NCBI RefSeq assembly: GCF_018977255.1
Contig: NW_024704877.1
Span: 62,001-126,000, forward strand
DNA length: 64,000 bases
From: Callorhinchus milii
Lineage: Eukaryota
Direction: 5' to 3'
The position numbers and the translations under genes were made by a program. The notes beneath the pieces are model-generated. The model searched no databases, was not told the DNA's origin, and saw only the letters and a program-made list of their open reading frames with translations. Below are positions 16,405-64,000 of the stretch, in pieces (within the stretch, counting starts at the first letter, position 1; every line of letters starts with the position of its first letter).

Positions 16405-16746
16405 GTGGAGTCCTGTAGCTCAGGTGGAGTCCTGTAGCTCAGTGGTTTGATCACTGGCTTTGCAAGTGAGAGACGTGAGTTCAATTCCAGGTAGGGCGAG
16501 ACCTTAGGCAAGTTTCCTTGCTCCACAAAGAGCCTAATAATAATCCCTCCAAAAATCAAAAACAATAATAAATTGGTCATTTTTCAATCCAGGACTGTTT
16601 GTGGGACATTGCTGTGCGCAACTGGCTGCCGCGTTTGCCCACAAAATACAATCAATTCACTTTACAGTGTGTTCTGTGAAGCGCTTTAGGACGCACTCCT
16701 ACGTGAAAAGCGCTATATCAAATGCAAGGATTATTATTATTATTGT
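16405..16746 (+). mobile_element. tRNA-derived SINE with L2-like tail and (ATT)n end; 19-bp duplication of its 5' end
   Basis: gtggagtcctgtagctcag occurs twice, followed by A/B-box-like sequence, tttgtgggacattgctgtgcgcaa core, gtgaagcgcttt tail and attattatt. Confidence 0.85.
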
Positions 16747-22613: not shown

Positions 22614-24639
22614 TCGCAACATCCACATCAAACAGGTGAGTTTAGGTCTTCATGATTTACAGCATTACTCACATCACAGAAAGCCGCCAATGATTGATAT
22701 TATCGTCCTGTTGACATGTGTACTCGTAGTCACAGTTACAGGTGATTGTAATGGTTATACAACTTGACCAGCAACGGTCAGTGATTTTAATCATTCACAA
22801 TCCTGACTGGAGGCTAATATTAGACAGAATGGCAGTGGTCATGTGCATTTGTCCCACATGTCTTCACGCCAATGATGATGAACTAAAATTAAAAGCTTCT
22901 TGTCAGCAATTTCACAGTGATGTGATCCATGGTTGGTTGCGACTGAAACGATAATTTGTATTTACCATTCTAAACTGTTGAAACTATTTTCTTTATTTGA
23001 CTCAGAGATTATTTTTCCTATACTTTACTCGCCGAACTTTTATGTTATTTTCTGAATCAAAATTTAATTACACATTCTGCTATTTGAGCGTAAAAAGTCC
23101 TTCTTCCTTTGTAAATGTGGTATCAAATGGCAGAAAGATTAACTAAAATAGTTGGAAACAGTCTCTCAAACAGCAGCCGCTGAACGAAACCCAAGTAACC
23201 GCCCAAGAGATTGTCAAAGCCAATGTGCTGTACTTTAGGGTGTTATAAATGGATCAGTATTATGTTATTGATGAGAATAAACTTATTTCCTTAAAATAAT
23301 ATCTTTTATTGTCTATTTTACAGAGCCAACCGAAATTTCATCACCAATAATTATTGATTATCTTTAGATAGAAACCAGTGAATAAGATGAATATACACGT
23401 TCCACCAGCATACCAACGCAATTAATATGAACCCGTGTCACATATTTCTGTGATAGCAATTTCCATGTGTGCTCTGTGTAAAACATTCCTCTGTGATTTT
23501 CAGAAGGATTTGTTTGCATTTCAGGTTGAAAATAACGTGTGTTTTATACATTGAAGTAATCTGATGCCTGTATTAGTGCTATCATATTACACAGAAAATT
23601 GTTGCATTTTTATCCTTTACTATTTTGTTTTGAATTTGCTTTGATGCTTACGATTCTAGACTGCAATAGAGCTTAAGTTTTTTTTATTTCCCGTCATTTT
23701 AAAAGATTTATTGTGAAAAAAATATTAGATTCCTGCGCATATTTCTTGAGATTATTTGCTGAATTTTATCAATCAAGTTATTGTATCGACGAAAGAGAAA
23801 TTGGTCAATTGGATAAAAACGGATCCAGTTTCAGATGAAGTGTGTATCCGAACCAGAAAGTTCTGTGATTATTCTGTAAACTGCAGCGAATGTTAGTTTT
23901 GGGATTAATACTAAAAGTTCAAGAAGAGCAAACAAAAGAGAATTGATGTTTTGACAGCACCCATCGTATCTGACGAGAGAGATTTCTGCTGTTAACTGTT
24001 CACCTATTTAACAAAAAGATTGTAAATGTTGAGTGAAAATCAAATAGACTTCAATAAATATCAAATGAACATGAAACCGCCCAGTTGTTTGTCATTGTTT
24101 TCAAATGCACAACACACTAACCACTGACATCGGTCTGTCCCTGAATACACTAGATTGCAACAAAACAGCAGGTTCGTGATCTGAAATTCGGTGTCATTCT
24201 CAAGAAATTCAGTCTGGATCATTGAATCTGTCACACAAACAAACAAACAAACAAACAAGGAAATACATGGAAACATAGATGCATAGATAAATAGACAATT
24301 ATGTAAAGAAAAACAGTTTGCGAGGGACAGTTGGCAGAGTAATGTGTGAGATACTGAGTGGAGTGGGAAGATTGGCAGGGAGTGTGGGAATGTGGATCAG
24401 GGAAGAGAGATTTGCCCCCGGGGTCTGTGGTCGTTGGGCTTGGGGTGATAGTGGGGAATGGGGCAATCAGTGTGGCTGCTGCTGGGGCAGAGGGAGGCCG
24501 TGGAATCAACCAGTAATGATAAGAGATGAGGAGGAAGAAGAGAGTGGAGGACTGAAAGGGATTGACACGTTTAGAGTGTATAGATGTGGGGTAGAAAGCA
24601 GGAAGACGTGTTGGGTAGACGATACTGATGTGGGTAGAG

Positions 24640-25035
24640 GGTAGTTTTGTGGGGTACAGGGCAGTAGTGTGGGGTAGAGGGCAGTGGTGTGGTGTAGAGA
24701 GCAGTGATCTGGGGTAGAGGGCAGTGATGTGGGGTAGAGGTCAGTGATGTGGATTTGAGGGCAGTGACGTGGGTTAGAGGGCAATGATGTGGGGTAGAGG
24801 GCAGCAATATAGGGTAAAGGGCAGCGATGTGGGGTAGTGGGCAGTGATGTAGGGTACAGGGCAGTGATGTGAGTTAGAGGGCAGTGATGTGGGGTAGAGG
24901 GCAGTGATGTAGGGTAGAGGGCAGTGATGTGGGATAGAGGGCAGTGATGTGGGGTAGAGGGCAGTGATGTGGGGTAGAGGGCAGTGATGTGGGGCAGAGG
25001 GCAGTAATTGGGGTAGAGGGCAGTGATGTGGGGCT
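24640..25035. repeat. 20-bp minisatellite (gcagtgatgtggggtagagg), ~19 copies
   Basis: Direct 20-bp periodicity is visible. Confidence 0.92.
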
Positions 25036-25369: not shown

Positions 25370-26320
25370 AGTCTCTGAGCTCCAATGTCTGTGCTCTGCC
25401 CTCTGTACCTGTGGCCTCCTGAGGCTCTGAGCTCCTATGTCTGTGCCCTGCCCTGTGCATCCGTGGCCTCCTGAGGCTCTGATCTCCAATATCTGTGCTG
25501 TGCCCTGGGTACGTGACCTCCTGAGGCTCTGACCTCTAATGTCTGTCCTGTGCCCTGGGTACCCGTGCCCTCCTGAGGCTCTGGGCTCCAATGTCTGTGC
25601 TGTGCCCTGTGTACCCGTGGCCTCCTGAGGCTCTGAACTCCAATGTATGTGCTGTGACCTGGGTACACGTGGCCTCCTGAGGTTCTGAGCTCCAATGTCT
25701 GTGCTGTGCCAGTGTACCGTGGCCTCCTGAGACTCTGAGCTCCAATGTCTGTGCTGTGCCTTGGGTACCCGCGGCCACCTGAGGCTCTGAGATCCAATGT
25801 CTGTGCTGTGCCCTGGGTACCCGTGCCCTCCTGAGGCTCTGGGCTCCAATGTCTGTGCTGTGCCAGCGTACCTTGGCCTCCTGAGGCTCTGAGCTGCAAT
25901 GTTTGTGCTTTGTTCAGGTTACCCGTCGGAACTTGAGGCCCTGAGCTCCAATGTCTGTGCGCTGCCCTGGTTACCCGTGGCCCCTTGAGGCTCTGAGCTC
26001 CAATCTCTGTGCCCTGCCCTTGGTACTCGTGGCCGCCTGAGGCTCTGAGCTCCAATGTCTGTGCTCTGCCCTTGGTACTCGTGGCCTCTTGAGGCTCTGA
26101 GCTCCAAGACCTGTGTCCTGCCCTGGGTATCCGTGGCCTCCTGAGGTTCTGAGCTCCAATGTCTCTGCCCTTCCCTGCATACCCATGGCCTCCTGAGGCT
26201 CTGAGCACTAATGTCTCTGCTCTGCCCTGGGTAGTCGTGGCCTCCTGAGGTTCTGAACTCCAATGTCTGTGCTCTGCCCTCTCTACCCGTGGCCTCCTGA
26301 GGCTCTGAGCTTCAATGTCA
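25370..26320. repeat. 52-bp GC-rich minisatellite, ~18 copies
   Basis: Unit ctgaggctctgagctccaatgtctgtgctgtgccctgggtacccgtggcctc; ctgagg recurs at 25419 and 25471. Confidence 0.92.
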
Positions 26321-27051
26321 GTGCTGCGTTTGGTTGTCTGTTTCAGGGGGAATGAAGTTTAATATTTTATATAGTTCATTTCAGACTCTCTGAAATAAAT
26401 TCACTTTAATGTTGTCTCTCCTTTGTGAATCAGAACTAACATCCAGTGGTACAGGGAAAGGCAAGTGAGATGGACAAAACACGTCTTACATTCAAAGACC
26501 TCTCCAACAAATGTCTCTCTTCTGTTTTGCAAACGCTCAACACACAGTGATCCCTCACTGAGATGTAAAGAGTGACTATGGCAACTGATATCCGATAACA
26601 TCTCATCCGGCTGAGTGTTTCCTGCTTGAAATCAACTGTGTTTGCATGTGAGTGTGCGTGAGAAAGAGACCGGGGTGGGGGGTATTTATCCATATCCACT
26701 GTTAATAATACTAACGTTAGGAGCAGAAAATAAATTTCCCGAGCGTTTCTGTGCTATAACTGCAGGCATCGCATACACTGGAGAACAAATCACTGTGAAA
26801 TTTGAACCTCAGAGGCCCAATTTCCCTAACATCTGAGTTGTGCTCACAGTCGATACGTCTACCAGCCAGAACCCCCTCATGTAATTAATTGTGACCATCA
26901 TTTGATCACACATATTCCAAATGACTTTATTCTGAGCTATAAATTACTAAAGTTCTGTGCTGACTTTTTGTGTTTGAAAGAGTTACCATTGCAACTGCTG
27001 TCAGATTACATCTGAGCTGCTGCTTGTTTTCTGCTTGAGACAAGTTTGTGT

Positions 27052-30479: not shown

Positions 30480-31660
30480 TGTCTGAAAAGGGTCGGGTCT
30501 TCGTGTACAAAAACAGAGCGAGCTCTCTGATTATCAGGACTGGTCTCTTTGCAACAGGTCTGGTATCTGTATAAAAGGACTGACCTCTTATAGCAGCTCT
30601 ATCGCTATTTCTATTATGTTTCAGGTTCCAGCATCTGCAGGTATTGTGTTTGGTTCTGGTCTCTGTATAACTTGCCTCGTCCATGGATAACAGGCCTGTT
30701 CTCTGATAGTAGGCCTGGTCTTTGTATAACAAGCCTGGTTGCTGTAAAAAAAGGTCTGTTCTCTGCATAGTGGAGTCCTGTTGCTCAGTGGTTAGAGCAC
30801 TCGCTTTGCAAGCGAGAGACCCGAGTTCAATTCCAGACAGGCCGAAACCTTGGGCAAGTTTCCTTACTCCATACACAGCCTAATAATAATCCCTCCAAAA
30901 GCCATAAACAATAATAAAACTAGTCATTTTCAATCTACGACTGTTTGTGGGACATTGCTGTGCGCAATTGGCTGCCGCGTTTGCCCACAAATATACAGTC
31001 AATTCACTTTACAGTGTGTTTCGTGAAGCGCTATATCAAATGCAAGGATTATTATTATTATTATTATTATTATTATAACTGAATTTTTCTCTGCATGATA
31101 GGCCTGATTACTCTATAACTGGCTGATTATCTACACAACAGGCCTGATCTCTGCAAAACAACCCTGGCCTCTGTATAAATTGTTTCGTCCCTGTAAAACC
31201 AGACTCGTCCCTATATAGCACACATTTTCTCTGAATCACAGGTTGGGTTAATATGTAACAGACCTGTTCTTTGTATAACAGACATGGTCACAGTGTAACA
31301 GGCCTGGTCTCTATATAACATGCCTAGTTTCTGCTTCAAAGGCCTGGTCTATATATAACAGGCCTGGTCTCTTTACAGCAGGTCTAGTGTCTGTATAACA
31401 GGCCTCGTCTCTGTCTAACAGATCTGTTCTCTCTAAAGCCGATCCGTTATCTTTTTATCAAGCTTGGTTTCTGTTTATCAGGCCTGTTTGTGTATAGCAG
31501 GCCGTGTCTCTTATAACAGGTCTTATCTCCGTATTACAGGGCCTAGTTCCGTAGAACACACCTGGTTCTGTATAGTAGGCCTTGTGTCTGTATTACAGGC
31601 CTTGTCTCTGTATAACAGGCCTGATCTACATACAACAAGCTTGGTCTCTGTATAGTAGAC
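30480..31660. repeat. Degenerate ~20-bp minisatellite (ataacaggcctggtctctgt) interrupted by a SINE
   Basis: The aacaggcctg core recurs on both sides of 30771-31076. Confidence 0.8.
30771..31076 (+). mobile_element. Near full-length tRNA-derived SINE
   Basis: gtggagtcctgttgctcagtggttagagcactcgctttgcaagcgagagacccgagttcaattcc... ending in (ATT)n. Further partial copies occur throughout 33-62 kb. Confidence 0.9.
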
Positions 31661-33204
31661 CTGTTCTAGCTATTCTACTAATAATCGTTGGGTTTGATTC
31701 AGTGCATTATCACTTCTTTGGGACATCTCAAGTTGCTTCACAGAATAAACTTTAAAATGAATTGATTGCATATTATTGTGGGGAATATGCGGCACCAAAT
31801 TTCGTAGAGCAGCATCCCACAAACATTTCTTGATTGAGTGACCACATTATTATTTTTTACAAGAACATTTCTTGAAGGTATAAATAGCCCCAAACATGAG
31901 AAAAACTCAGAAACGTTTTCACACACACAACAGAATCACTTATACATGTATAAATTTGATACTCGTGTACAGTTAATCAGTCATGAAAATGGATTATCGG
32001 GTTCCTGTTTGTATGCAGATTCATAGACTCACTGAAATTAATGCAGATCAATAGTCTTACAAATTACCAACAACCAAAACATTCAATAGTTTCATGCTTC
32101 CAGTAGATGCACTGACACAGTCATTCGCAAATCCAACTGAAGTATATAGTACCATTCCTCACCATTGTAGCACAATACATTACATATCTGAATACATTGT
32201 TGAAAGGATCTGTACAACTTATTATGCAGATTGACGTTATTTCAACGATACCTCATTCAAAAGTTTTGTTTGAGAAAACTGGATAAATAAATCCTGTATG
32301 TCAGTCACACGTAAATAGGTTCAGGCTTTGTGTATTATTAACTGATGGGATGTGTTAAAAGGAAATCATGAATCCAAGAAAAATCCTGGACGTGATGGAT
32401 AACAGAAATTTCCAAAGGACATGTCCCAGCCTTACTCAGTGGAATCAATCTCACCTCTGGGTCAGCAGTTTGTTGGTTCAAGCCCATATTGGGACATGGA
32501 ATCACATTGCCTTAACTAGATTTCTAATGCAGTGATGGGGCTGTGTTACATCGTTGGAGGTGCGGACCTTTGCATGAAACGTTCAACACAGATCTGGCTG
32601 ACTGTTCAGATGGAAGTTAAATGTCCCATGGCACTTAACTATTCCCAATGTGAAGCAACATCCCAGAAATTTCTGAATAAAAAACGAGAGTGCTACTGAG
32701 CTCCTGAGACAGACTGACACAGATTCACTTTATTCCCTTTCAGTACTACTCTTGCGTCAATCAGTAAGCAATCTTTTTCAAAGCTGATAATAGAAATTCC
32801 ATTGTTTATCCATAGATGTGTATACAATAGAAATATTTGGAGTATATTCTGATTAATTATGAATCCGGAAATCAATCTTGAATGAAATACATCTTTGCAA
32901 AATTGTGGTAAATAAAGCAACATGTTCCACTCTTGTGCCTTATCTGTCCAGAACTTTGTGTTGCTTTGAGTAATAAAAAGTTAAATTTTGAGTTTCCCAG
33001 CCCTGCTATCATGTCGGGTTTTGAGAACATTACGATCAGATAAGGAAGCCATTCTCCAGTCTGCAATATTTCTGTTGTCCACAGGTGGAGCAGATCTTTT
33101 TGTCTTTGAAAGTGAAAGATCAGCTGTTGAACTGCAAGAGAGGAAATTGTCAGATGCTGTTTGTGCAAATGAATTTAATTGATGTGAAATCGGAAATTTT
33201 CAAT

Positions 33205-33920
33205 TCGTTCATGCGAATCAAACGAGATTGACCGAAATCGGCTTCAGGGTTGGAGTAACCTTTGCAGCTTTGCTCAGTCGGTACCAGAAGAATCAATAGC
33301 CACTCAGCGATGTAAATTAGTTACTGTCCAAAGCCACTTGTCCCCCTTCTGTCTTGGTCACTGAAGGCACCGTATGGGTAATGCAATCTCCACTGGTCAG
33401 ACCGGAAAAAAAGTTTAAAATAAAAAACAGATTTAATCAATAATTAATACTGACATTTTATACAGCGCCTTACGAAGTCTTCCAGACATCCCATAGAGCT
33501 TCACAAAATACACTGTAAAGTGAGTTGAATACATTTTGCATTCGAAACGCTGCAGCCAATTGCGCAAACCAGTGTCTCACAAACAAGTCATGGATTAAGT
33601 GATCAATTTATCATGAATTGTTTTTGAAGGCATTATTGAACCTGAAATGCGAACCGCCTTTTTAGTCGATAGAATAACAATCAGGTTCATTATGCTGTGG
33701 GTGGAGTGAGGAAACTTGCCCAATATTTTGCCCTACAGGGAATCAAGTTGGGTCTCTCGCTTGCGGGGTGTGCGCTCTGAACACTGAGCTACATGACTCC
33801 ACTGATGAAAGCTGTGCACTCAATGTTGAACATTGCCCGAAACTTTGGCGATTGGCCTTATTTGATATCATTTAATATCATTAAATCAGCGAGGGCCAAC
33901 AGGATCATAATTCCTCCCAT
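33205..33920 (-). pseudogene. Truncated TCR V pseudogene (5' half) with a decayed leader
   Basis: GLTSGDCITHTVPSVTKTEGGQVALDSN*...FFWYR at 33205-33402; acceptor mutated to CCG; MGGIMILLALA-like leader at ~33875-33920. Confidence 0.65.
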
Positions 33921-34823: not shown

Positions 34824-35656
34824 AGTTTTTGTACGAGGCTGTGACCTGTTCCCATCACTGTGGGGCTGAACACACAGTAATACACAGCGGAGTCAGACAG
34901 CTGTAACTGGGAGATGGTTAATCTGCTGGATTTTCTCGAGGTCTGCAGCTCATCCGAGAAACGAGATTTAGCAAAATTTTCTTTATGTTCATAAGTATTT
35001 GTACACCTCTGTAGGATATACTCGGGTTGTGCCACTGAGAGATGTCGGTACCAGTATAAGCAATAGACGCTCAGTGATGTATGATAAATGCTGTCCAAAA
35101 TCACTTATCCTCCTTCTGTCACAGTCACTGAAGTTTCCGACTGAGCAACAGAATCTCCGCGGGTCAGACCTGAAACTCAAGCGAAAAATAAAAATGAACA
35201 GAATTTACAAAACATCTTGCATTTGATATTCTTATGTCTTCTAGACGTTTCACAACACTTCACAGAATATACTGTGAATTGAATTGAATGTATATTTTGT
35301 GAAAAAAGCCTGACAGCAAAGTAGTGTTCCACAAACAGCACAGGTTAAAATACTAATTTATTATTTTTTTCTTGGAAGAATTATTCCACCTGATTAAACG
35401 ATCCACCAATTGGCTGACAAACGGTTCGTATAATTTCCGAGTGGAGTAATTCAAGAAGCCCAAGGTTTCGCCCTGAGGGGAATCGAACTCTGATCTCTCG
35501 CTTGCGAGGTGAGCGCACTATATGCTGATCCACAAGATTCCACCAATAAAAGCCATGCAATCAATTTTGAACATTGGCTGAAAGTTTAGCTATTTGCCTT
35601 AATTGATCACCTGGTAGAAAAACAGCCAGAATCACCCAGATCACAATTCCCCCCAT
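34824..35656 (-). pseudogene. TCR alpha/delta V pseudogene with leader and intact 23-RSS
   Basis: Leader 35611-35656 (MGGIVIWVILAVFLP). V exon 34863-35169 has an in-frame TAA and has lost the first Cys; WYR and DSAVYYC are retained. RSS is CACAGTG-23-ACAAAAACT (34824-34862). Confidence 0.88.
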
Positions 35657-36688: not shown

Positions 36689-37028
36689 GGTTTATGTACA
36701 GTGGTGTCGTCTGACAGTGTGTGATGGCACAATGTGTGGCCGTGTCAGGTAGAGACACCGGGAGCACATTTCCAGTGGATCTCTCCCTCCTCGTATCCAG
36801 ATTAGTGGTGAAACATTGTGTTGCAAATTCAGCACCGAAAGTTTCCCCGTTAAAATCATGCCACTGTGTGAGATTCCCTCAGATGAGACTTCCCTGGATA
36901 CTGATGGGACCAGAATATCAAAACATTGGTGAAATCAGCAGACAAACTGCTGCTCAGGGTGATAGTCTGGCCTTCAGTAACAGATACTTCTACATGTGAT
37001 GGTTTAACGCTGACTCTGATCGCTGCTC
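36689..37028 (-). pseudogene. TCR V pseudogene (VSVKPS family) with partly deleted heptamer
   Basis: VSVKPSHVEVSVTEGQTITLSS...LIFWSHQYPG, a stop, then HCAIT. The nonamer ACATAAACC is retained but the heptamer region is shorter than in the paralog at 40.6 kb. Confidence 0.8.
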
Positions 37029-40555: not shown

Positions 40556-40901
40556 GGTTTATGCACAGTGATGTAGTCTGACAGTAACACTGTGTGTGTG
40601 ATGGCACAGTAATGTTTGACCATGTCAGGTAGAGCCACGGGGAACACAAATAGAGTGGATCTCTTCCTGCCCATGTACAGATTTGGCGTTAAACTTTGCG
40701 TTGCAAATTCAGCAATGAATACATCCCCCTCAGAATCAGGTCTCCTTGTGTACTGAGGAGGTTCGCTTGGATACTGACGGTACCAGAATATTAAACCATT
40801 GGTGGAATCAGCAGAGAAGGTTCAGCTCAGGGTTACAGTCTGTACTTCAGTAACAGACATTTCCACCTCTGATGGTTCAACACTGACTCCATCTCCTGTC
40901 C
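40556..40901 (-). pseudogene. TCR V pseudogene (first Cys codon mutated to TGA) with intact 23-RSS
   Basis: GVSVEPSEVEMSVTEVQTVTLS*TFSADSTNGLIFWYRQYP...HYCAIT; RSS CACAGTG-23-GCATAAACC (40556-40594). Confidence 0.85.
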
Positions 40902-41992: not shown

Positions 41993-42333
41993 GGTTATTG
42001 TACGAGGCTTCTTATGATGTGTATCACTGTGGTGCAGACTGAGTGCACAGTGGTACATAGCGGAGTCTGTCAGCCGCAGTCCGGCGATGGTTAAAACGCT
42101 GATTTTCTTGGCAGTGTCAAGAGATACAGAAATATGATCTCCAGTGGGGTTTCCTCCCTCTCCTGAGGGTTTTCTGTGGAGCAGGTATTTCAGTTCCTCG
42201 CCAGGGGTCTGACGGTACCAGGAGACGCTGAAATCCTGTCCACAGTATCCTGAATATTGGCAATGTAAATTTATCCTCTCACCAGCAAAAGCAGTTTGTT
42301 CAGGCGGTGACTGGGAAACTGTATAGTTGGATC
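41993..42333 (-). CDS. NAR-TCR supporting V-delta 1 (leaderless, CDR1 Cys), open, 23-RSS
   Basis: Exon 42032-42333 reads ...LHCQYSGYCGQDFSVSWYRQ...DSAMYHCALSL; RSS CACAGTG-23-ACAATAACC. No leader was found between it and the upstream J. Confidence 0.9.
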
Positions 42334-44031
42334 CTGCGGGACGCAAATTACGGTTTACTTAGAGTCATGGAATCATTGAATCTTTCAGCACAGAAGGAGA
42401 CCATTCAGCCCATCGTGTCTGTGAAAAGAGCTTTGAAAAGTGCCAACCAATATAATCCCACTCTCTCGCAATGAACACATAGAACTTTATAATTCCTTTT
42501 GATGCATCCAACCAATTCCATACTGAAATTATCTTTCGAATCTGTTTCCACCACCCGTTGAGGCAGCACATTGCATTCAATAGGAATTTTCTATGAAAAT
42601 AAATCCTTCTGCTCTCCCCTCTTGTTCTTTTACCAATTATCATACATTTGGGTTCATTGGTGACTGAACACTTGCCAGTGGAAGCATGTTATCCTTCTCT
42701 TCTCTATCAAAAACACTCACAGCTCTGAACACTTCATCTAAATCTCCCCTAAACCTTCGATGCTCTCAGGAGAAGATTGCCAGATTCTTCATACAAACTA
42801 ATTCCCTCTGTCTTGGTATCATTTTGCTAAATGTCCTTTGCACCCTGTCCATGGCCTTCACGCATGTGTCCGTGAAAGGTACAAAGAAAAATGAAGGGAT
42901 TAATGTTACATCAACAGTGGAAGGAGCAATGGAATGTATTGAAATAGGCATTTCTTGTCGCTGAGCCATGTTTTATTGCAGACGCAAACCTTATTTCTAT
43001 GACTGTATACCATTGATATGATCTCTCATAAATGAACCGTTTAATTGAGGATTGTTTCTCTAATCTTATATTTGTTTGCTGTTGCGGTTTGTCGACATTG
43101 AGGCTTTGAGTGTCTGCGATCATGGGAATGTTTAGCAGAGAATCAGGTGTCAGGTTGTACCGTTAACTTCAGCGCGTTTACAGTGGAAGCACATGGAAAG
43201 TTTCTCTGCTGTAAATATCATTACTTTAACATCGCTGCTGGAGGAGATTTATTCTCTGGTTTGTTGCCAATATCAGTTTCTCTCTCAGTCTGTGAACTGT
43301 TCATTGCAGTTTCACTTGTGCCAGAAGCAAAGTGCTTTCTCTCTCTCTTTATGTGTTGCTTNNNNNNNNNNNNNNNNNNNNNNNNNNNNNNNNNNNNNNN
43401 NNNNNNNNNNNNNNNNNNNNNNNNNNNNNNNNNNNNNNNNNNNNNNNNNNNNNNNNNNNNNNNNNNNNNNNNNNNNNNNNNNNNNNNNNNNNNNNNNNNN
43501 NNNNNNNNNNNNNNNNNNNNNNNNNNNNNNNNNNNNNTCTTTCTTTCTGTCCCTCTTTCTGTCTAATTCTTTTTTCATTCTTTCTTCAAATGTCATGGCT
43601 TACATTTTCGCAACATGCAGTGTTTCTGCAGGCTTGCATATTGACTTGCTTGTTGGTGTAGAATAAAGCAGAATTACCTCGGATCTCTCAGCGAATATGG
43701 AGAGAGGAAAGTGTGTTAACGTTTCAGGTCGATGAACTTGATTCAGAAATTTATACCCCACTTTTCGGGAGAACAGAGGAGGTTATTGATGATAACACAT
43801 CATTTTACCCAGTTCAAGCACAAATTCATTACCCAATTAATATCAATTTACTCTGGTCATGTTCCTTTGGAACTACTATGCAATCCAAATCAGTGACTTT
43901 CAAAACATGGAAATAAAATTTGGTCATTTGAGAAACAAACCTTGATGTAGTATTCGGTTAGAATAATGTTTTTTGACAAACTCACGTAAATAAACTTTTA
44001 TGTTAGTTCGTTAGAAATATTTCGCACTTAC

Positions 44032-44126
44032 TTTTCGTTACAGTTACTTTGGTTCCTGAACCATCTTCTGTATATTCCTTATAATAGCACAGTAACACAG
44101 CTCTGACTCTACAAGGTGCAAAAACT
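44032..44126 (-). other. NAR-TCR J segment 1 with 5' 23-RSS
   Basis: J 44032-44087 reads YYKEYTEDGSGTKVTVTK with a phase-1 GTAAG donor; RSS AGTTTTTGC-23-TACTGTG (44088-44126). Confidence 0.9.
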
Positions 44127-44440: not shown

Positions 44441-44511
44441 GGTAATTGTGATGATCTTTTCCAATGTGGGTTCCCAAGCCAAGCACGTTGTTTTATGTCA
44501 ACACAAAAACA
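44441..44511 (-). other. NAR-TCR D segment flanked by 12/12 RSSs
   Basis: TGTTTTTGT-12-CAACGTG, D = CTTGGCTTGGGAACC (44469-44483), CACATTG-12-ACAATTACC. Confidence 0.82.
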
Positions 44512-44835
44512 CCGGTTCGCAAAACAATTCAAATGAGTTCTGCCATTTACAAATGGTCAATTAATCACATAACGTGTAAAATTCTTTTGAGTATTTTCTC
44601 AATAAATTTGCATGCCGTCTGTCCCTTGCAATAATTTATAAGGTATATGAATCCAAACAACGTATTAACTTCAGATTGATACACACTCACTTTTCCTAAG
44701 TATTCATAACTGACAGTCGCTGCTTAAAGGAAGTATTCTTAAACATAGCTGCACATCACACACGAATGAGGAACATGCACTGAACTCATCGGCAATTTCA
44801 CATTCTCTGTGTTTTTCCTGTGAGTTGGTGACGGA

Positions 44836-45590
44836 GCTTTTTGTATTGTTGGAAGCCCAGATACGGCATTGTGGTATCCCAGTTATATCGAGCTCTACAG
44901 TAATAATCAGCGCTGTCTTCAACTTGCAAGGCATTAATTTCCAGAGAACAGGACCACGATCCCTTGTCTGTCTTCACAACAAACCGTCCTTCACGAGGAA
45001 TGGGCTTCCAATTTCTTTCATTTGGAAACCGCCTATAAAACTCCATACTTTTGAATACGATTTGATAACTTGCTGAGAAGACACAGTTGATGGTTAGAGA
45101 CTCGCATTCTTCTCTTCTAATAGAGGATGGCGTCTGTGTTACTGATGCGCTGAAAACATCTGAGAAATTTTACACAATATGACATCCGTTTAGCAGATAT
45201 TCAACATTGACCACTTCTATTACAATTCCAGTGCAAGATTTGGCTTTATCTCCCTTGATATCAGTTTACATAGTATACTCGGGATTATGTAGTATCATTA
45301 TTATATTAATGAATTCATATGATTATAATATATAATGAAATTAAAGTAAAATAATTGCCTGGCGCGTTTCGCCCACAAAATACTAAGTTATTTCAGTACA
45401 CAAACTATTATTTGAAGCGATTTGAGACGTCCCATCCACATCATAACACTATACAACAATGACAAGGATTATTTATATAGTGTAACTATAGTACTGATGA
45501 CATTCATTGGTGCTGCGAAGTGCTGTGTTATGGAAACAACCACTTACATTGTAAGAAGAGGAAGGAGATGGAGATCCAGAGGAGAGACAT
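44836..45590 (-). CDS. NAR-TCR V segment (IgNAR-like V) with leader and RSS, intact
   Basis: Leader 45548-45590 reads MSLLWISISFLFLQ with a GTAAGT donor. V exon 44874-45159 reads SVTQTPSSIRREECESLTINCVF...GRFVVKTDKGSWSCSLEINALQVEDSADYYCRARY, with a short NAR-like C'-C'' region and an FR1 Cys. RSS is CACAATG-22-ACAAAAAGC. Confidence 0.9.
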
Positions 45591-48885: not shown

Positions 48886-49272
48886 TAATAATGCCAATAA
48901 TTATCCTTGCATTTGATACAGCGCCTTATCACGTCTTTCAGACATCCCAAAGAAAATCACAGAATATGATGTAAAGTGAATTCATTGCATCTTTTGTGGA
49001 TGGTACGTGGCAGCCAATTTAGCTCGGCGACGATCAAAAACGTGTCATGGATTGAGTGACCAAATTAATATTATTTATTGAAGGGTTTATTATCCCCACA
49101 AAAACAAACTGCCAATCGACTAAGAACACGTCATTTCTTGCTGCTCAGCAAACCGAGGTGGGTAGAGTGATGAAACGTGCCCACAATTTTCCCCGGATGG
49201 GAATCAAACAGAAGTCTTTCCCTTTCGAGGCAAGTGCTCTTACCACTGAGCTAAAAGGCTCCACGTTGGCTC

Positions 49273-58711: not shown

Positions 58712-58970
58712 GGATTTGGTACAGTGGTGTAGTCTGACAGTAACACTGTGAGTGTGTTATTGCAGGGTAATGGTTGGTGGTAGATTTGGCGTTAAAAGTT
58801 GAGTTGCAACTTCAGCACAGAAAGTGTCCCCATCATAATCATGTCTCCGCGTGTACAGATGAGGCTCCCTGGATACTGACTCTATCAGAACATTAAAGCA
58901 TTCTTGAAATCAGCAGATTAGGTGCAGCTCAGGGTGACAATCTGGACCTCAGTAACAGACACTTCCATTG
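58712..58970 (-). pseudogene. Truncated TCR V pseudogene (VSVKPS family)
   Basis: Internally deleted paralog of the 40.6 kb V; heptamer at 58744-58750. Confidence 0.7.
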
Positions 58971-59874: not shown

Positions 59875-60215
59875 GGTTATTGTACGAGTCTTCCTATGAT
59901 GTGTTTCACTGTGGTGCAGACTGAGTGCACAGTGATACATAGCGGAGTCTGTCAGCCGCAGGCCGGCGATGGTTAAAACGCTGATTTTCTTGGCAGTGTC
60001 AAGAGAAACAGAAATGTGATCTCCAGTGGGGTTTCCTCCCTCTCCTGAGGGGTTTCTGTGGAGCAGGTATTTCAGTCCCTCGCCAGGGGACTGACGGTAC
60101 CAGGAGACGCTGAAATCCTGTCCACAGAATCCTGAGTATTGGCAATGTAAATTTATCCTCTCACCAGCAAAAGCAGTTTGTTCAGACGGTGACTGAGAAA
60201 CTGTAAAACTTGATG
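59875..60215 (-). CDS. NAR-TCR supporting V-delta 2 (leaderless, CDR1 Cys), open, 23-RSS
   Basis: Exon 59914-60215 reads ...LHCQYSGFCGQDFSVSWYRQ...DSAMYHCALSL; RSS CACAGTG-23-ACAATAACC. Confidence 0.9.
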
Positions 60216-62478
60216 CTGCGGAATGCAAATTGCAGGTTACTTAGAATCATGGAATTATGGAAATTTGCAGCACAGAAGGAGGACGTTCGGCCCTTCTTGT
60301 CTGTATCGGCTCTTTGAAATGAGCTATTCAATTGAATCCCACTCCCCCGCTCTTGTCACAGAACCCTGTATCATTCCTTCTGATGCATTTATCCCATTCC
60401 CTTCCGAAATTTATTATCGTATCTGTTTCCGCCATTCTTTCAGGCAGTGCATTGCAGTCAGTAGCAAATATCATCTGAAATAAAATTCACCTCCACTCCC
60501 CTCTGATCCTTTGATCAATTATCTTAAACTTGTGTTTCTGGGTACTGACCCACTTGAGTAAGGAAACAGTTTCTCATTCTCTACTCCATAAAAAAAGCTC
60601 TCACAAGTTTCAAAACTGACATTATTTCACCAGTAAATCTTCGATGCTCTGAGGAGAACATTTTCTGGCAGTTTTGCCTTCATACACATGAATCCTCTCT
60701 TCCCCCCAGAAATCATTCTGGAAAATTTCCTTTTCTCCCTGCCCAATGCTTGGAAATTCTTTATCCTAAACGTAAGGATGCTTTTAGTAACAATGATAGA
60801 AATAGCAGATGATTGCATTAAAATAGCGAGCTCTTGGAAATGGATCATTTTAATTAAGCTTTGTTTGTCTAATCTTATACTTGTTGCTTTGGTGAAGTCC
60901 ACATTGTGGCTTTGGTTGTCTGCGATCATGGGAATGTTTAGCAGAGAATCAGGTGTCTGTTTGTACCGTTAACTCAGTGGGTTTACAGTTGAGGCAAATG
61001 GAAAGTTTCCTGCTGTAAATGTCGTTTCTTTAACATCGCTGCTGGAGAAGGTTTAGTCTCTGGCTTGTTGCCAATATCAGTTGCTCTCATTCAGTGAACA
61101 TCTCAATTCAGTTTCTCTTGTACCAGATGGAAATTGCCTTTTGTCTGTCCCTCTCTTTCTCCCTTTCTTTCTAACTTTTTGATATTTTCATCTTTTTTTC
61201 TTTCGGTCGTTTCTTCCATGGAATTTCTTTCTTTTAGGAGTCGCCTCAATGCACTTGTGTGTGAAGTTACGTGCAATCTGTCTTTCTTTCTCTTTCTTTG
61301 CCTGTCCCTTGACATAATGCCGGGCATTCAGGATTTCTGCCACCACAGTGTCTCCCAATCCCTGAGTCTCAACCCATCCCTTGCCTCTTTCAAGGGCCTG
61401 ACTCACCTTACACTCCACCTCACTTGATTGCAACCTCCAAGCTCGGATGTGCAGCGCATTGAGTCTTATACAATTATTTCAAATAAGGATAAGAGTACTG
61501 TGTTGGTCACTCAAACCATAAGTTTTTGTGGGACACTGCAGTGTGCAGTTGGCTACCACTTTTAGCCCACAAAATATACAGTCAAATTACTTAGCAGGAT
61601 TTTTTGTGAAGAACTTGGAGTCGTGTCAATTACGTGATAAGGCGCTGTATCAAACGCAAGGATCATTATTATCAAAGGCCCTGAATAATGCAGCACGATG
61701 TTCCTGCTTTATTTTCCTTTTATTCATTATACTTTTTTTCTGTCATTGTGTGTTCTTTCTTTCTACCGCTTTCTTATTCACTTTGTTACCTTCCTTGTTG
61801 TCTCCTAGTTTATCAGGCTATCAGTCTGCTTATTTAGTGTGAATTTTTCTGTGCACGATATTGGAATAATCAGTTCTAAATTATGTTTAACATCATTCAA
61901 GACATGAAAATGACCAAAAGCTCTTCACTGATTATATTACATAAGCTACGTGATGGTGATTGAAGGCCACATCAATACACCACATGACAAGCTTTGCACT
62001 TGAGCATTAGCTCAAGGTCGACTTGTTCAATATCCCGTTGTGTGCCCTGAACACATAACATTTAAACTCTGAATGCAGTGTCTGCAACTTAACAGCCAAA
62101 GCCTCCAAAACCCTGTTTGTTACGCAGTATAAATTGTCGTCACAATTTTTTATTGTTATTTAATGTGACTTTAGTGAAGAAAAATTATATTCCTTTCTAC
62201 CAGATTTTGCACAATGTAAATCATTTGCATCAATGGATATTTGTTTGCCTTTGGTGTATAATGATACCGGGTTCCGCTGTTATAAGCGGTGCCCGGGAAT
62301 ACTGCAGATCCGTCTGGCTCAGAAACTGGAATAGAGACAGTCGCACTGAGTGGACATAACCCTACATCCTGTGGCCAAACATGTCACCTTGGTTCTTGCA
62401 ATGAATCCCATTAATGCATTAGAAAATTCACAGCAATTATTTTTTTTTTTAATTCATTTTCAAATTGTTCTCACTTAC

Positions 62479-62829
62479 TTTTTGTTACAGTTACTGCGGT
62501 TCCTGTTCCATCTTTAGTTTTCTCTCTTTTTCCCACAGCGCAGCGATTTGCATCATATCGAGCTCTACAGTAATATTTTCCGCCGTCTTGAACTTCCAAG
62601 TCATTGATTTCTAGAGAAAATGAAGCCGATTCCTTATCTGCTTTTACAACAAATCGACCATCTACCGGGATCGACACCAACTGTGTCCCTTTTCCAATCT
62701 GTCTGAAAAATTCCATACTCTTGAAAGTCTCACCAGATACGGCTTCAAAGACACATCGAGTGGATACGGATCCGCATTCTTCTCTCGTAAGAGAGGTTGG
62801 TGTCTGCTTTACTGAGACACCGGCACCAT
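62479..62829 (-). CDS. Germline-joined NAR-type V(D)J exon, open frame, no RSS, no leader found
   Basis: A 351-nt phase-1/phase-1 exon: DGAGVSVKQTPTSLTREECGSVSTRCVF...DGGKYYCRARYDANRCAVGKREKTKDGTGTAVTVTK followed by a GTAAGT donor. Confidence 0.88.
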
Positions 62830-63936
62830 CTGAAATATATACACAACATTTTAAAAAACATTAACTTTCTCTACTCCAAACCAAAGTGAATCCCAAGATT
62901 CGCTTGAATTTGTTTGATATTTCACATTGTAAATCTGATAGTTAGAGCCTCGGGACGACCTCCAGGTGAGAAAGGCACTACGTAAACGCCATTTATAGTT
63001 GTTAACTCCAGGGTAACAGTACAATTTAAATCTGCGCTTTTGAACTGATAATATATTAAAGAGGCACAATTCGTAACCTGGTTACTATTCGCTTGCTGTT
63101 TTTTGTCCTCTCTTTGTATGTTGGGTAACAAAGGATAAAATTGTATTTTAATGGGCAAGGCTATGGGGAAAGGCAGTGATTATTCAGCTCTTCCAAATGG
63201 TCTGACATTCTGTGCTGTAATATTCAGTGATTCAATGATTTCATTTTGCTCAACAGGGTATCTGAAATAGGCCAGAAGCCATCAGGAAGCTTAACAGTAC
63301 CAAAACCAAACTACGGTTCCTGTGCCTTTCTAACAATATGACCCCAGAATTCACACAATTTCCCCCCATGAGAAGCACCCTGCAAAGCTTGTCATTGAAA
63401 ACAATGTCTTGCGAACTATTCATCTGCTTGTCCACCTTGCAAAACTGTACACTTCATTGCAACTTTTTCTTGCACGGTTAATCGTAGCGCAGTGAAAAAA
63501 GACTATATCCCCAGTTACTGGACTGCTCTCACAAATCATGTAACCTTGGAGCCAATTCAGTTCCGAGGCGTTCACCTTTTTACTCCGCTCGGGAGGATAG
63601 AGGGCATTTCTATTTGGTAGAGGCTACATGAATTGTTTACGTCCATTAAATTGAAATAGGTCCTCTGCGCATATTCAGCTAGAGACGATGTCCAGCCAAA
63701 GTCGGTGACTTGACATAACACGGAAATGAAAGCAGCTAATTTGAGAAGCAAGCTTCACAGTGGAAGCTGAATAATGTTTGCCACATTATAAACATTCTTT
63801 GTTTAAGATTGCTCAAGTGTATTGCTAAAATGGCACAGTGGCATACAATTCGGAGCAATCAGTTCGAAAAATGGATTTTACAAATTATCTAGAATAAAAT
63901 TTAATTGCAATTCGATAGTATTTTTTTCTCACTCAC

Positions 63937-63999
63937 ATTTCGTTACAGTCACTTTGGTTCCTGTTCCATCTTCTGTGTATTCATTATAATACCACAGTC
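63937..63999 (-). other. NAR-TCR J segment 2 (unrearranged; heptamer at window edge)
   Basis: J 63937-63992 reads YYNEYTEDGTGTKVTVTK with a phase-1 GTGAGT donor; heptamer GACTGTG at 63993-63999; same 56-nt length as J1. Confidence 0.88.
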
Positions 64000-64000
64000 A

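What the first reader, a model, noticed from the sequence alone, without database searches (positions are those of the whole stretch)
59875..64000. Candidate three-V-domain T-cell receptor delta chain (NAR V, fixed NAR VDJ, supporting V-delta)
Seen: in transcription order there is an unrearranged NAR-type J (63937-63992, heptamer, phase-1 donor), then 1.1 kb later an open pre-joined NAR V(D)J exon (62479-62829, phase 1/1), then a leaderless supporting V-delta (59914-60215, phase-1 acceptor, 23-RSS). I found no leader between J2 and the joined exon, whereas the sister NAR V has a clear leader ~390 bp upstream (45548-45590). Established: NAR-TCR chains have two V domains, built by splicing a NAR J to a leaderless supporting V-delta. 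Inference: the joined exon is a second leaderless supporting domain, giving L-VNAR(rearranging)-VNAR(fixed)-Vdelta-Cdelta, an extra-long TCR architecture I do not know to have been described.
Basis: partly seen in the sequence, partly recalled or inferred. Interest (0 to 1): 0.95.

Follow-up and report, generated by a model that had tools for sequence, protein, structure and literature searches.

The report
Pre-joined NAR exon inside NAR-TCR cluster
In the elephant shark T-cell receptor delta region, a ready-made antibody-like variable-domain exon with no signal-peptide exon of its own sits in the intron between a rearranging NAR J segment and its supporting V-delta; sharks have the same layout, so some cartilaginous-fish T-cell receptor chains may carry an extra, fixed variable domain, which transcripts have yet to show.

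Summary
The window is Callorhinchus milii TCR alpha/delta V region.

- **The exon.** 62829-62479 is a germline-joined NAR V-D-J exon. It is open, has no RSS, is phase 1/1 and has consensus splice sites.
- **Its position.** It lies inside an intron whose two ends match the J-to-supporting-V-delta intron of the neighbouring standard cluster.
- **No leader.** No convincing leader lies in the 1.1 kb between J2 and the exon.
- **Paralogues.** At least three more C. milii copies carry almost the same CDR3.

The same layout occurs in horn shark and in three great white shark loci. There the joined exons lack leaders or have dead ones, yet stay open with mean dN/dS of 0.45. One RefSeq prediction, XP_041031384.1, splices two joined NAR exons in series onto the V-delta. 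Two others splice an upstream leader straight to the joined exon.

A three-V chain is therefore a credible product. A two-V chain with a fixed NAR domain is equally compatible. No transcript was available, and the V and leader upstream of J2 lie outside the window. I found no description of this arrangement in the searchable literature.

The parts
63993..63999 (-). J2 RSS heptamer (GACTGTG); spacer and nonamer lie beyond the window edge
   Evidence: aligns with the sister J heptamer TACTGTG
63937..63992 (-). Unrearranged NAR-type J segment J2 (YYNEYTEDGTGTKVTVTK), ending in a phase-1 split codon, with donor GTGAGT at 63936-63931
   Evidence: 88% identical to the sister J
62830..63936 (-). Intron between J2 and the joined exon. 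The first ~80 nt (63936-63859) are paralogous to the sister J flank. No convincing leader exon. 63387-63358 (LCRVLLMGGN) is shared with a paralogue (Ensembl model A0A4W3GLF4).
62479..62829 (-). Leaderless germline-joined NAR V-D-J exon, 351 nt, phase 1/1, open. Cysteines: a-b loop (EEC), C23, C104 and one in CDR3 (NRC). FFRQ replaces WYRQ.
60216..62478 (-). Intron between the joined exon and the supporting V-delta. The 3' part (60216-61149) is homologous to the 3' part of the sister cluster's J-to-V-delta intron. 61511-61672 is a dispersed repeat.
59914..60215 (-). Leaderless supporting V-delta exon (cluster B), phase-1 acceptor, CDR1 cysteine
   Evidence: 95.7% identical to the cluster A copy
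59875..59913 (-). 23-RSS of the supporting V-delta (CACAGTG-23-ACAATAACC)
45548..45590 (-). Sister cluster A: NAR V leader exon (MSLLWISISFLFLQ, donor GTAAGT)
44835..45159 (-). Sister cluster A: unrearranged NAR V exon (45159-44874) with its 23-RSS (CACAATG-23-CAAAAAGCT)
44441..44511 (-). Sister cluster A: D segment CTTGGCTTGGGAACC flanked by 12-RSSs
44032..44126 (-). Sister cluster A: J (44087-44032, YYKEYTEDGSGTKVTVTK) with its 23-RSS
41993..42333 (-). Sister cluster A: leaderless supporting V-delta (42333-42032) with its 23-RSS. No joined exon in its readable 1.7 kb intron, which holds an N run at 43362-43537 (not filled).

Best explanation
Cluster B is a NAR-TCR cluster of the Callorhinchus milii TCR delta V region. 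A second NAR V-D-J set became fused in the germline and now survives as a leaderless cassette exon. That exon lies inside the intron between the rearranging NAR J (J2) and the leaderless supporting V-delta.

The exon has consensus phase-1 splice sites at both ends. Any pre-mRNA that starts at the upstream NAR V leader and runs through the cluster should therefore splice it in frame.
- If the upstream V-D-J2 is rearranged, the product is L-NAR V(diverse)-NAR V(fixed)-V delta-C delta, with three V domains.
- If it is not rearranged, the upstream V exon has no donor. The leader can then splice directly to the joined exon, giving a two-V chain with an invariant NAR domain.

Shown: the anatomy, the absence of a recognisable own leader, the existence of paralogues with a near-invariant CDR3, and the same layout with dead or absent leaders and purifying selection in two sharks.

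Inferred: that the exon is actually included in transcripts, and in which combinations.
For: - Anatomy and phases.
- The exon is a true V-D-J fusion of NAR type.
- The J2 flank and the 3' part of the intron before the V-delta match the two ends of cluster A's single J-to-V-delta intron, so the exon lies inside that intron.
- No NAR leader homologue or signal-like ORF in 62830-63936.
- At least three further C. milii paralogues are 77-83% identical overall and share the CDR3 RAR[YF]DANRCAVGKRE[KN]TKDGTGTAV[TI]VTK. One of them shares the upstream sequence.
- Horn shark L004 has L-V-D-J, then two leaderless joined VDJ exons in a 1.1 kb repeat unit that begins at the leader-intron donor but lacks the leader exon, then one supporting V-delta.
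- Great white L005 has intact L, V, D and J, then a pseudo-leader (ATG to ATA), an intact joined exon and a V-delta.
- Great white L001 has the same layout. L003 is an array of at least four joined exons (three examined, one partial). In the four examined great white copies the leaders were inactivated in different ways.
- Five great white joined exons are all open, with mean pairwise dN/dS 0.45 (bootstrap 95% interval 0.29-0.76).
- RefSeq XP_041031384.1 joins the J donor of one joined exon to the acceptor of the next and then to the V-delta, through canonical GT-AG introns.
- The tree places the C. milii joined exons with C. milii unrearranged NAR V, apart from the shark ones. That implies at least two independent origins.
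Against: - No transcript evidence for C. milii. The protein searches returned only genome-derived Ensembl models, which read through the donor.
- The leader, V and D upstream of J2 are outside the window, so their integrity is unknown.
- Horn shark joined exon 1 has an in-frame TGA, and great white L001 V1 has a TAA. Not every unit can therefore make a three-V chain, and some exon skipping or decay must occur.
- XP_041031398.1 and XP_041031388.1 model only two V domains.
- RefSeq models are predictions. XP_067869961.1 (horn shark) has a non-canonical junction. Other Gnomon models in this family bridge V to J through artificial introns.
- dN/dS below 1 may partly predate the loss of the leaders.
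- From my own recollection, not verified here, published nurse shark cDNA surveys describe only two-V NAR-TCR chains.
Confidence: 0.55

Rival explanations
1. The joined exon is used only as the N-terminal domain. The upstream NAR V leader splices directly to it, giving L-NAR V(fixed)-V delta-C delta, an invariant innate-like NAR-TCR. When V-D-J2 is rearranged, the joined exon is skipped or such chains are not selected. No three-V protein exists.
For: - Great white RefSeq models XP_041031398.1 and XP_041031388.1 are exactly this, skipping the unrearranged V.
- The joined exons keep a 5' end compatible with signal-peptide cleavage: GSFS|QSV in shark, YGAG|VSV in C. milii.
- The CDR3 is nearly invariant among paralogues.
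Against: - After rearrangement, the J2 donor faces a consensus acceptor 1.1 kb away, so skipping would need active regulation.
- In L003 the joined exons are arrayed one after another, and one RefSeq model chains two of them.
- The joined exons of all three species carry one extra CDR cysteine, which would stay unpaired at the tip of a two-V chain. This point is suggestive only.
Confidence: 0.2
2. The joined exon is a non-functional relic of a germline-rearranged duplicate. It is skipped or causes transcript decay, and J2 splices to the supporting V-delta as in a standard NAR-TCR.
For: - Horn shark copy 1 has an in-frame stop.
- Standard clusters without any joined exon exist in the same window and in five other loci surveyed.
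- The splice sites are inherited from the ancestral V and J, and so are not in themselves evidence of use.
Against: - The exon is open in four C. milii paralogues that differ by 17-23% in protein. All canonical residues and the CDR3 are kept.
- Five great white copies are open, with dN/dS 0.29-0.76.
- The layout is recurrent in three species and arose at least twice.
Confidence: 0.15
3. The joined exon has its own cryptic promoter and leader inside 62830-63936 and makes an ordinary two-V NAR-TCR independently of J2.
For: - Weak candidates exist: MFIMWQTLFSFH with donor T|GTGAAG at 63795-63759, and MNSSQDIVFNDKLCRVLLMGGN with donor T|GTGTGA at 63423-63358. An Ensembl model of a paralogue uses part of the second.
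- My leader scan missed 3 of 7 conventional V leaders.
Against: - Neither candidate has a signal-peptide-like n-region or an uninterrupted hydrophobic core.
- There is no similarity to the conserved NAR leader MSLL(W/G)(I/V)SISFLFLQ.
- The Ensembl models are ORF extensions that also read through the donor.
- In sharks the corresponding leaders are demonstrably dead or absent.
Confidence: 0.05
4. Assembly artefact: J2 and the joined exon are not really adjacent.
For: The region belongs to a multi-copy family, and the window contains N runs elsewhere.
Against: - There is no N between 59875 and 64000.
- An older, independent assembly yields models that match the V-delta B sequence, and a paralogue with the same upstream sequence.
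- Independent assemblies of two sharks show the same layout.
Confidence: 0.03

Closest known systems
NAR-TCR (doubly rearranging TCR delta of cartilaginous fish; Criscitiello et al. 2006, as summarised in PMC1845163 and PMC5931798)
   Same: - NAR-type V with an a-b loop cysteine and no canonical Trp41.
- J spliced to a leaderless supporting V-delta with a CDR1 cysteine.
- Located among TCR alpha/delta V segments.
- Cluster A in the same window is a textbook example.
   Different: - The joined exon is not assembled somatically: it has no RSS.
- It has no leader.
- It lies between a rearranging NAR J and the supporting V-delta, so it can add a third V domain or replace the diverse NAR domain with a fixed one.
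Marsupial TCR mu (Parra et al. 2007; PMC2275272, PMC7615758)
   Same: - A rearranging V-D-J is followed by a germline-joined V exon used as an internal, invariant domain.
- The proposed origin is the same: duplication of a V-D-J set, one copy of which was joined in the germline.
[quoted passage not shown]
   Different: - It is not homologous: mammalian VH-like V and C mu rather than NAR V and C delta.
- In TCR mu the joined V is the membrane-proximal V, next to C. Here it would be a middle or distal domain, followed by another, rearranging V-delta.
Germline-joined Ig genes of cartilaginous fish (PMC2193156, PMC2192082)
   Same: V(D)J fused in the germline, presumably by RAG activity in germ cells. 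Fused copies then duplicate.
   Different: Those are complete Ig clusters with their own leader and C exons. This is a TCR-locus exon without a leader, embedded in another cluster's intron.
RefSeq predictions XP_041031384.1, XP_041031398.1 and XP_041031388.1 (Carcharodon carcharias) and XP_067869961.1 (Heterodontus francisci)
   Same: They are gene models from loci with the same layout. The first chains two joined NAR exons plus the V-delta. The second and third join an upstream leader to a joined exon plus the V-delta.
   Different: They are unreviewed predictions under unrelated names (for example 'DSCAM-like protein 1 homolog'). They are not a described receptor, and the shark joined exons arose independently of the C. 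milii ones.

Membership tests
NAR-TCR | Membrane-distal V of NAR type: a-b loop cysteine, and Trp41 of WYRQ absent | tested here: met
   The joined exon has TREEC and FFRQ. Its best full-length solved relatives are IgNAR V domains.
NAR-TCR | The NAR V carries its own leader exon | tested here: not met
   No leader homologue or signal-like ORF in 62830-63936. The sister V has one at 45590-45548.
NAR-TCR | The NAR V domain is assembled by somatic V-D-J rearrangement ('doubly rearranging') | tested here: not met
   V, D and J are contiguous in the germline with no RSS. J2 upstream and cluster A do meet this feature.
NAR-TCR | The NAR J donor splices to a leaderless supporting V-delta that has a CDR1 cysteine and its own RSS | tested here: met
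   At sequence level only: donor AAA A|GTAAGT, acceptor cgcag|CA in the same phase, GFCGQ, and a 23-RSS. Splicing itself was not observed.
NAR-TCR | Expressed with C delta as a TCR delta chain | not testable with these tools
   C delta is not in the window, and no C. milii transcripts were available.
TCR mu-like architecture (functional analogy, not homology) | A rearranging V-D-J followed by a germline-joined, leaderless V exon used as an internal exon | tested here: inconclusive
   The genomic layout is met in C. milii, horn shark and great white. Internal-exon use is supported only by one RefSeq prediction.
TCR mu-like architecture (functional analogy, not homology) | Homology to the marsupial/monotreme V mu and C mu genes | tested here: not met
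   The exon groups with C. milii NAR V and IgNAR V.
Germline-joined antigen-receptor genes of cartilaginous fish | A contiguous V(D)J in germline DNA that retains a D-like core and a J motif | tested here: met

The most novel reading that the evidence does not exclude
Cartilaginous fishes build TCR delta chains of variable length. Leaderless, germline-joined NAR V cassette exons have arisen independently in chimaeras and in sharks. They are spliced in series between a rearranging NAR V-D-J (or an upstream leader) and the supporting V-delta. The products carry one, two or more NAR domains on top of V delta-C delta, including a genuine three-V-domain receptor whose middle domain is invariant.
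Probability: 0.4. Interest if true: 0.9.

Novelty: new variant of a known kind. Interest (0 to 1): 0.8.

Why it matters
- **First germline-joined V in a TCR locus outside marsupial and monotreme TCR mu.** This would be in the oldest jawed-vertebrate lineages.
- **Convergence.** The TCR mu solution of a diverse V stacked on a fixed, pre-joined V would have evolved repeatedly.
- **A new receptor form.** If the exon is included after upstream rearrangement, this is a TCR chain with three variable domains, which I have not seen described.
- **An alternative reading that also matters.** If the exon is used with an upstream leader, it defines an invariant NAR-TCR, possibly an innate-like receptor.
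- **Annotation and repertoire work.** Shark TCR delta annotation and repertoire pipelines should expect these exons. They are currently scattered in RefSeq under unrelated names.
- **Engineering.** The naturally fixed NAR domains are candidate scaffolds for single-domain binders.

Tried and rejected
- **Ensembl/UniProt C. milii models** (A0A4W3GLF4, A0A4W3GPE3, A0A4W3GJH3 and the supporting V-delta models). They extend ORFs into introns and read through the donor (..VTKSK*). They prove that paralogues exist but say nothing about splicing.
- **The roughly 234-residue Gnomon models across elasmobranchs.** They look like joined V(D)J but contain RSS read-through (VSLWW, NTVM), which means artificial V-to-J introns. 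I did not count them as germline-joined.
- **XP_067869961.1 (horn shark).** It has a non-canonical junction that avoids the TGA, so I did not use it as splicing evidence.
- **Transcript-derived proteins.** None turned up in three protein searches.
- **Homology between the 62830-63936 interval and the sister leader, leader intron or promoter.** None found.
- **Leader scan.** Its positive control recovered only 4 of 7 conventional leaders.
- **Cysteine bookkeeping** as an argument for a supporting role. It is suggestive in sharks but not clean in C. milii, where the sister V and two paralogues carry an extra E-strand cysteine.
- **Key papers not held.** Criscitiello 2006, Ott 2021 and Deiss 2019 could not be read. 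The Venkatesh 2014 supplement is also not held.
- **Structure prediction.** Not run, because the tool returns no coordinates and so could not test the inter-domain cysteine distances.
Full report
**Observation.**
- J2 is 63992-63937 (YYNEYTEDGTGTKVTVTK). A GACTGTG heptamer sits at the window edge, and the donor is AAA T|GTGAGT.
- 1,107 nt downstream lies an open 351-nt exon, 62829-62479. Its acceptor is tttcag|AT and its donor is AAA A|GTAAGT.
- That exon encodes a complete V-D-J...YYCRARYDANRCAVGKREKTKDGTGTAVTVTK. It contains no RSS heptamer.
- 2,263 nt further on is a leaderless V-delta exon, 60215-59914, followed by CACAGTG-23-ACAATAACC.
- All junctions are phase 1. J2 to the joined exon (Tyr codon), the joined exon to V-delta (Thr) and J2 to V-delta (Ser) are all in frame.
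- The joined exon scores above the Pfam V-set cut-off. Its best full-length solved relatives are IgNAR V domains.
- It has the NAR-TCR hallmarks described in PMC1845163: an a-b loop cysteine, and Phe in place of the WYRQ tryptophan.

**Context.** The window is Callorhinchus milii. Ensembl-derived UniProt models match it at up to 98%, including read-through of the RSS of V-delta B.

The window is a stretch of TCR alpha/delta V segments, all on the minus strand. It contains a textbook NAR-TCR cluster, cluster A:
- leader 45590-45548
- V 45159-44874 with a 23-RSS
- a 12/12 D at about 44483-44469
- J 44087-44032 with a 23-RSS
- leaderless supporting V-delta 42333-42032

The D of cluster A (CTTGGCTTGGGAACC) resembles the core of the joined exon's CDR3 (GCTGTGGGAAAA). 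The exon is therefore a real V-D-J fusion.

**Where the exon sits.** J2 and about 80 nt of its downstream flank are paralogous to the J of cluster A and its flank (z = 7.9). The last 930 nt or so before V-delta B are paralogous to the end of cluster A's J-to-V-delta intron. The two V-delta exons are 95.7% identical.

The flank downstream of the joined exon does not match the J flanks (z = 2.4). Its V part is only 70% identical in DNA, and 53% in protein, to the cluster A V.

So the joined exon lies inside what is, in cluster A, a single J-to-V-delta intron.

**Leader.** The 62830-63936 interval has no homologue of the conserved NAR leader. It has no similarity to the cluster A promoter, leader or leader intron. 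No ATG-to-phase-1-donor ORF there has a signal-like core. The same scan found only 4 of 7 conventional V leaders, so on its own this negative is not decisive.

**Paralogues.** Three more C. milii models (A0A4W3GLF4, A0A4W3GPE3, A0A4W3GJH3) are 77-83% identical to the exon. They have an almost invariant CDR3-J: RAR[YF]DANRCAVGKRE[KN]TKDGTGTAV[TI]VTK. One of them shares the upstream sequence at 63387-63358. The fusion therefore predates several duplications. These models read through the donor, so they give no information about splicing.

**Other species.** NCBI models found with the conceptual product led to genomic loci that I annotated from DNA.
- *Horn shark, L004.* Leader, V with a 23-RSS, a 12/12 D and J. 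Then come two germline-joined NAR VDJ exons in a 1.1 kb tandem unit. The unit starts with J-intron sequence and continues with the leader intron from its donor onwards, but the leader exon is missing. One supporting V-delta follows. Copy 1 has an in-frame TGA and copy 2 is intact.
- *Great white shark, L005.* Intact leader, V, D and J. Then a pseudo-leader (ATG to ATA plus an indel), an intact joined exon and the V-delta.
- *Great white shark, L001.* The same layout, with TAG at codon 4 of the pseudo-leader and a TAA in the upstream V.
- *Great white shark, L003.* At least four joined exons in series before one V-delta (one partial at the locus edge, three examined). Each examined copy has a differently inactivated leader: ATG lost, TAG at codon 4, ATG to ATT, or donor lost.

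Five great white joined exons are all open. Their mean pairwise dN/dS is 0.45, with a bootstrap 95% interval of 0.29-0.76.

Standard clusters without a joined exon also exist, in basking shark, catshark, thorny skate, zebra shark and horn shark. This mirrors clusters A and B in the window.

A tree separates all C. milii NAR V sequences, joined and unrearranged, from the elasmobranch ones with 100/99 support. Germline joining in this position therefore arose at least twice, unless concerted evolution within species has erased an older origin.

**Predicted transcripts.**
- XP_041031384.1 (great white) joins the J donor of one joined exon to the acceptor of the next, and that one to the V-delta, through canonical GT-AG introns.
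- That model ends in a downstream exon reached from a cryptic donor formed by the RSS heptamer. This looks like a germline transcript rather than a homology artefact.
- XP_041031398.1 and XP_041031388.1 instead join the upstream NAR leader directly to the joined exon and then to the V-delta.
- All of these are predictions. I could not check their RNA support.

**Mechanism.**
- *Shown.* There is a leaderless, germline-joined NAR V cassette exon with consensus splice sites in the J-to-supporting-V-delta intron. It recurs in three species, with leaders absent or decayed and coding sequence conserved.
- *Inferred.* Transcripts starting at the upstream NAR leader include it. With a rearranged V-D-J2, the J2 donor meets the cassette acceptor first, which gives three V domains. 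Without rearrangement, the upstream V exon has no donor, so the leader can splice to the cassette. That gives two V domains with a fixed NAR domain.
- *Likely origin.* Duplication of a V-D-J set without its leader, or with later loss of the leader, followed by germline RAG joining. The same scenario has been proposed for marsupial TCR mu (PMC2275272).

I put about 0.55 on this dual-product model and about 0.4 on a real three-V protein.

**Rivals.** A two-V-only product (0.2), an unused relic (0.15), a cryptic own leader (0.05) and misassembly (0.03).

**Comparison with what is known.** The closest family is NAR-TCR. The joined exon fails two of its defining features, an own leader and somatic assembly. 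[quoted passage not shown]

Four full-text searches found no description of germline-joined NAR-TCR exons or of three-V TCR chains. The primary NAR-TCR papers were not available to me, so prior mention cannot be excluded.

**Verdict.** This is a new variant of a known kind, of high interest, and it can be tested directly with existing RNA-seq or a C delta-primed long-read experiment.

Noticed in passing
window 6500-9350: A long GA/GT-rich low-complexity tract with strong GC skew (0.62 in 6-8 kb) surrounds two N runs (8837-8967 and 9140-9346).
   Followed up: partly
window 24626-25033, 25373-26326 and 31256-31654: Three minisatellites: a 20-mer x20, a 52-mer x18 (GC 0.52) and a 20-mer x20, lying between V segments.
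   Followed up: no
window 61511-61672 and at least 14 other places (e.g. 16584-16740, 3387-3556, 48896-49063, 31676-31844): A dispersed repeat of about 160 nt, 68-80% identical between copies and in both orientations. One copy lies in the intron between the joined exon and V-delta B.
   Followed up: no
window 42032-42333 versus 59914-60215: The two supporting V-delta exons are 95.7% identical, while the adjoining intron is only 71-83% identical. This points to strong constraint or gene conversion on the supporting domain.
   Followed up: partly
window about 40560-40900, 34830-35170, 36810-37015, 58800-58970 and 33220-33400: Several conventional V alpha/delta segments carry in-frame stops (pseudogenes). 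Segments at about 55.2-55.6 kb, 51.2-51.5 kb, 49.3-49.6 kb and 38.3-38.7 kb look open. My scan found no leader within 1.1 kb for the 51.5 kb and 49.6 kb segments.
   Followed up: partly
window 43362-43537: An N run lies inside cluster A's J-to-V-delta intron.
   Followed up: no
L003 19700-19720 and 21866-22000; L001 22551-22634: In great white RefSeq models the V-delta RSS heptamer (CACA|GTGATG) acts as a cryptic splice donor to a downstream exon. This suggests sterile transcripts from unrearranged supporting V-delta segments.
   Followed up: partly
UniProt A0A4W3HYK7 (P0004), C. milii, not in the window: A supporting-V-delta paralogue. Its upstream intron reads as a contiguous hydrophobic leader-like ORF (MRLFAVCLVNIFLL...), and its CDR1 cysteine is lost (GLYGQ). 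It may be a supporting V reverting to a stand-alone V.
   Followed up: no
L004 10082-12318: The horn shark repeat unit that carries the joined exon begins almost exactly at the leader-intron donor. The duplication breakpoint therefore excludes only the leader exon.
   Followed up: partly
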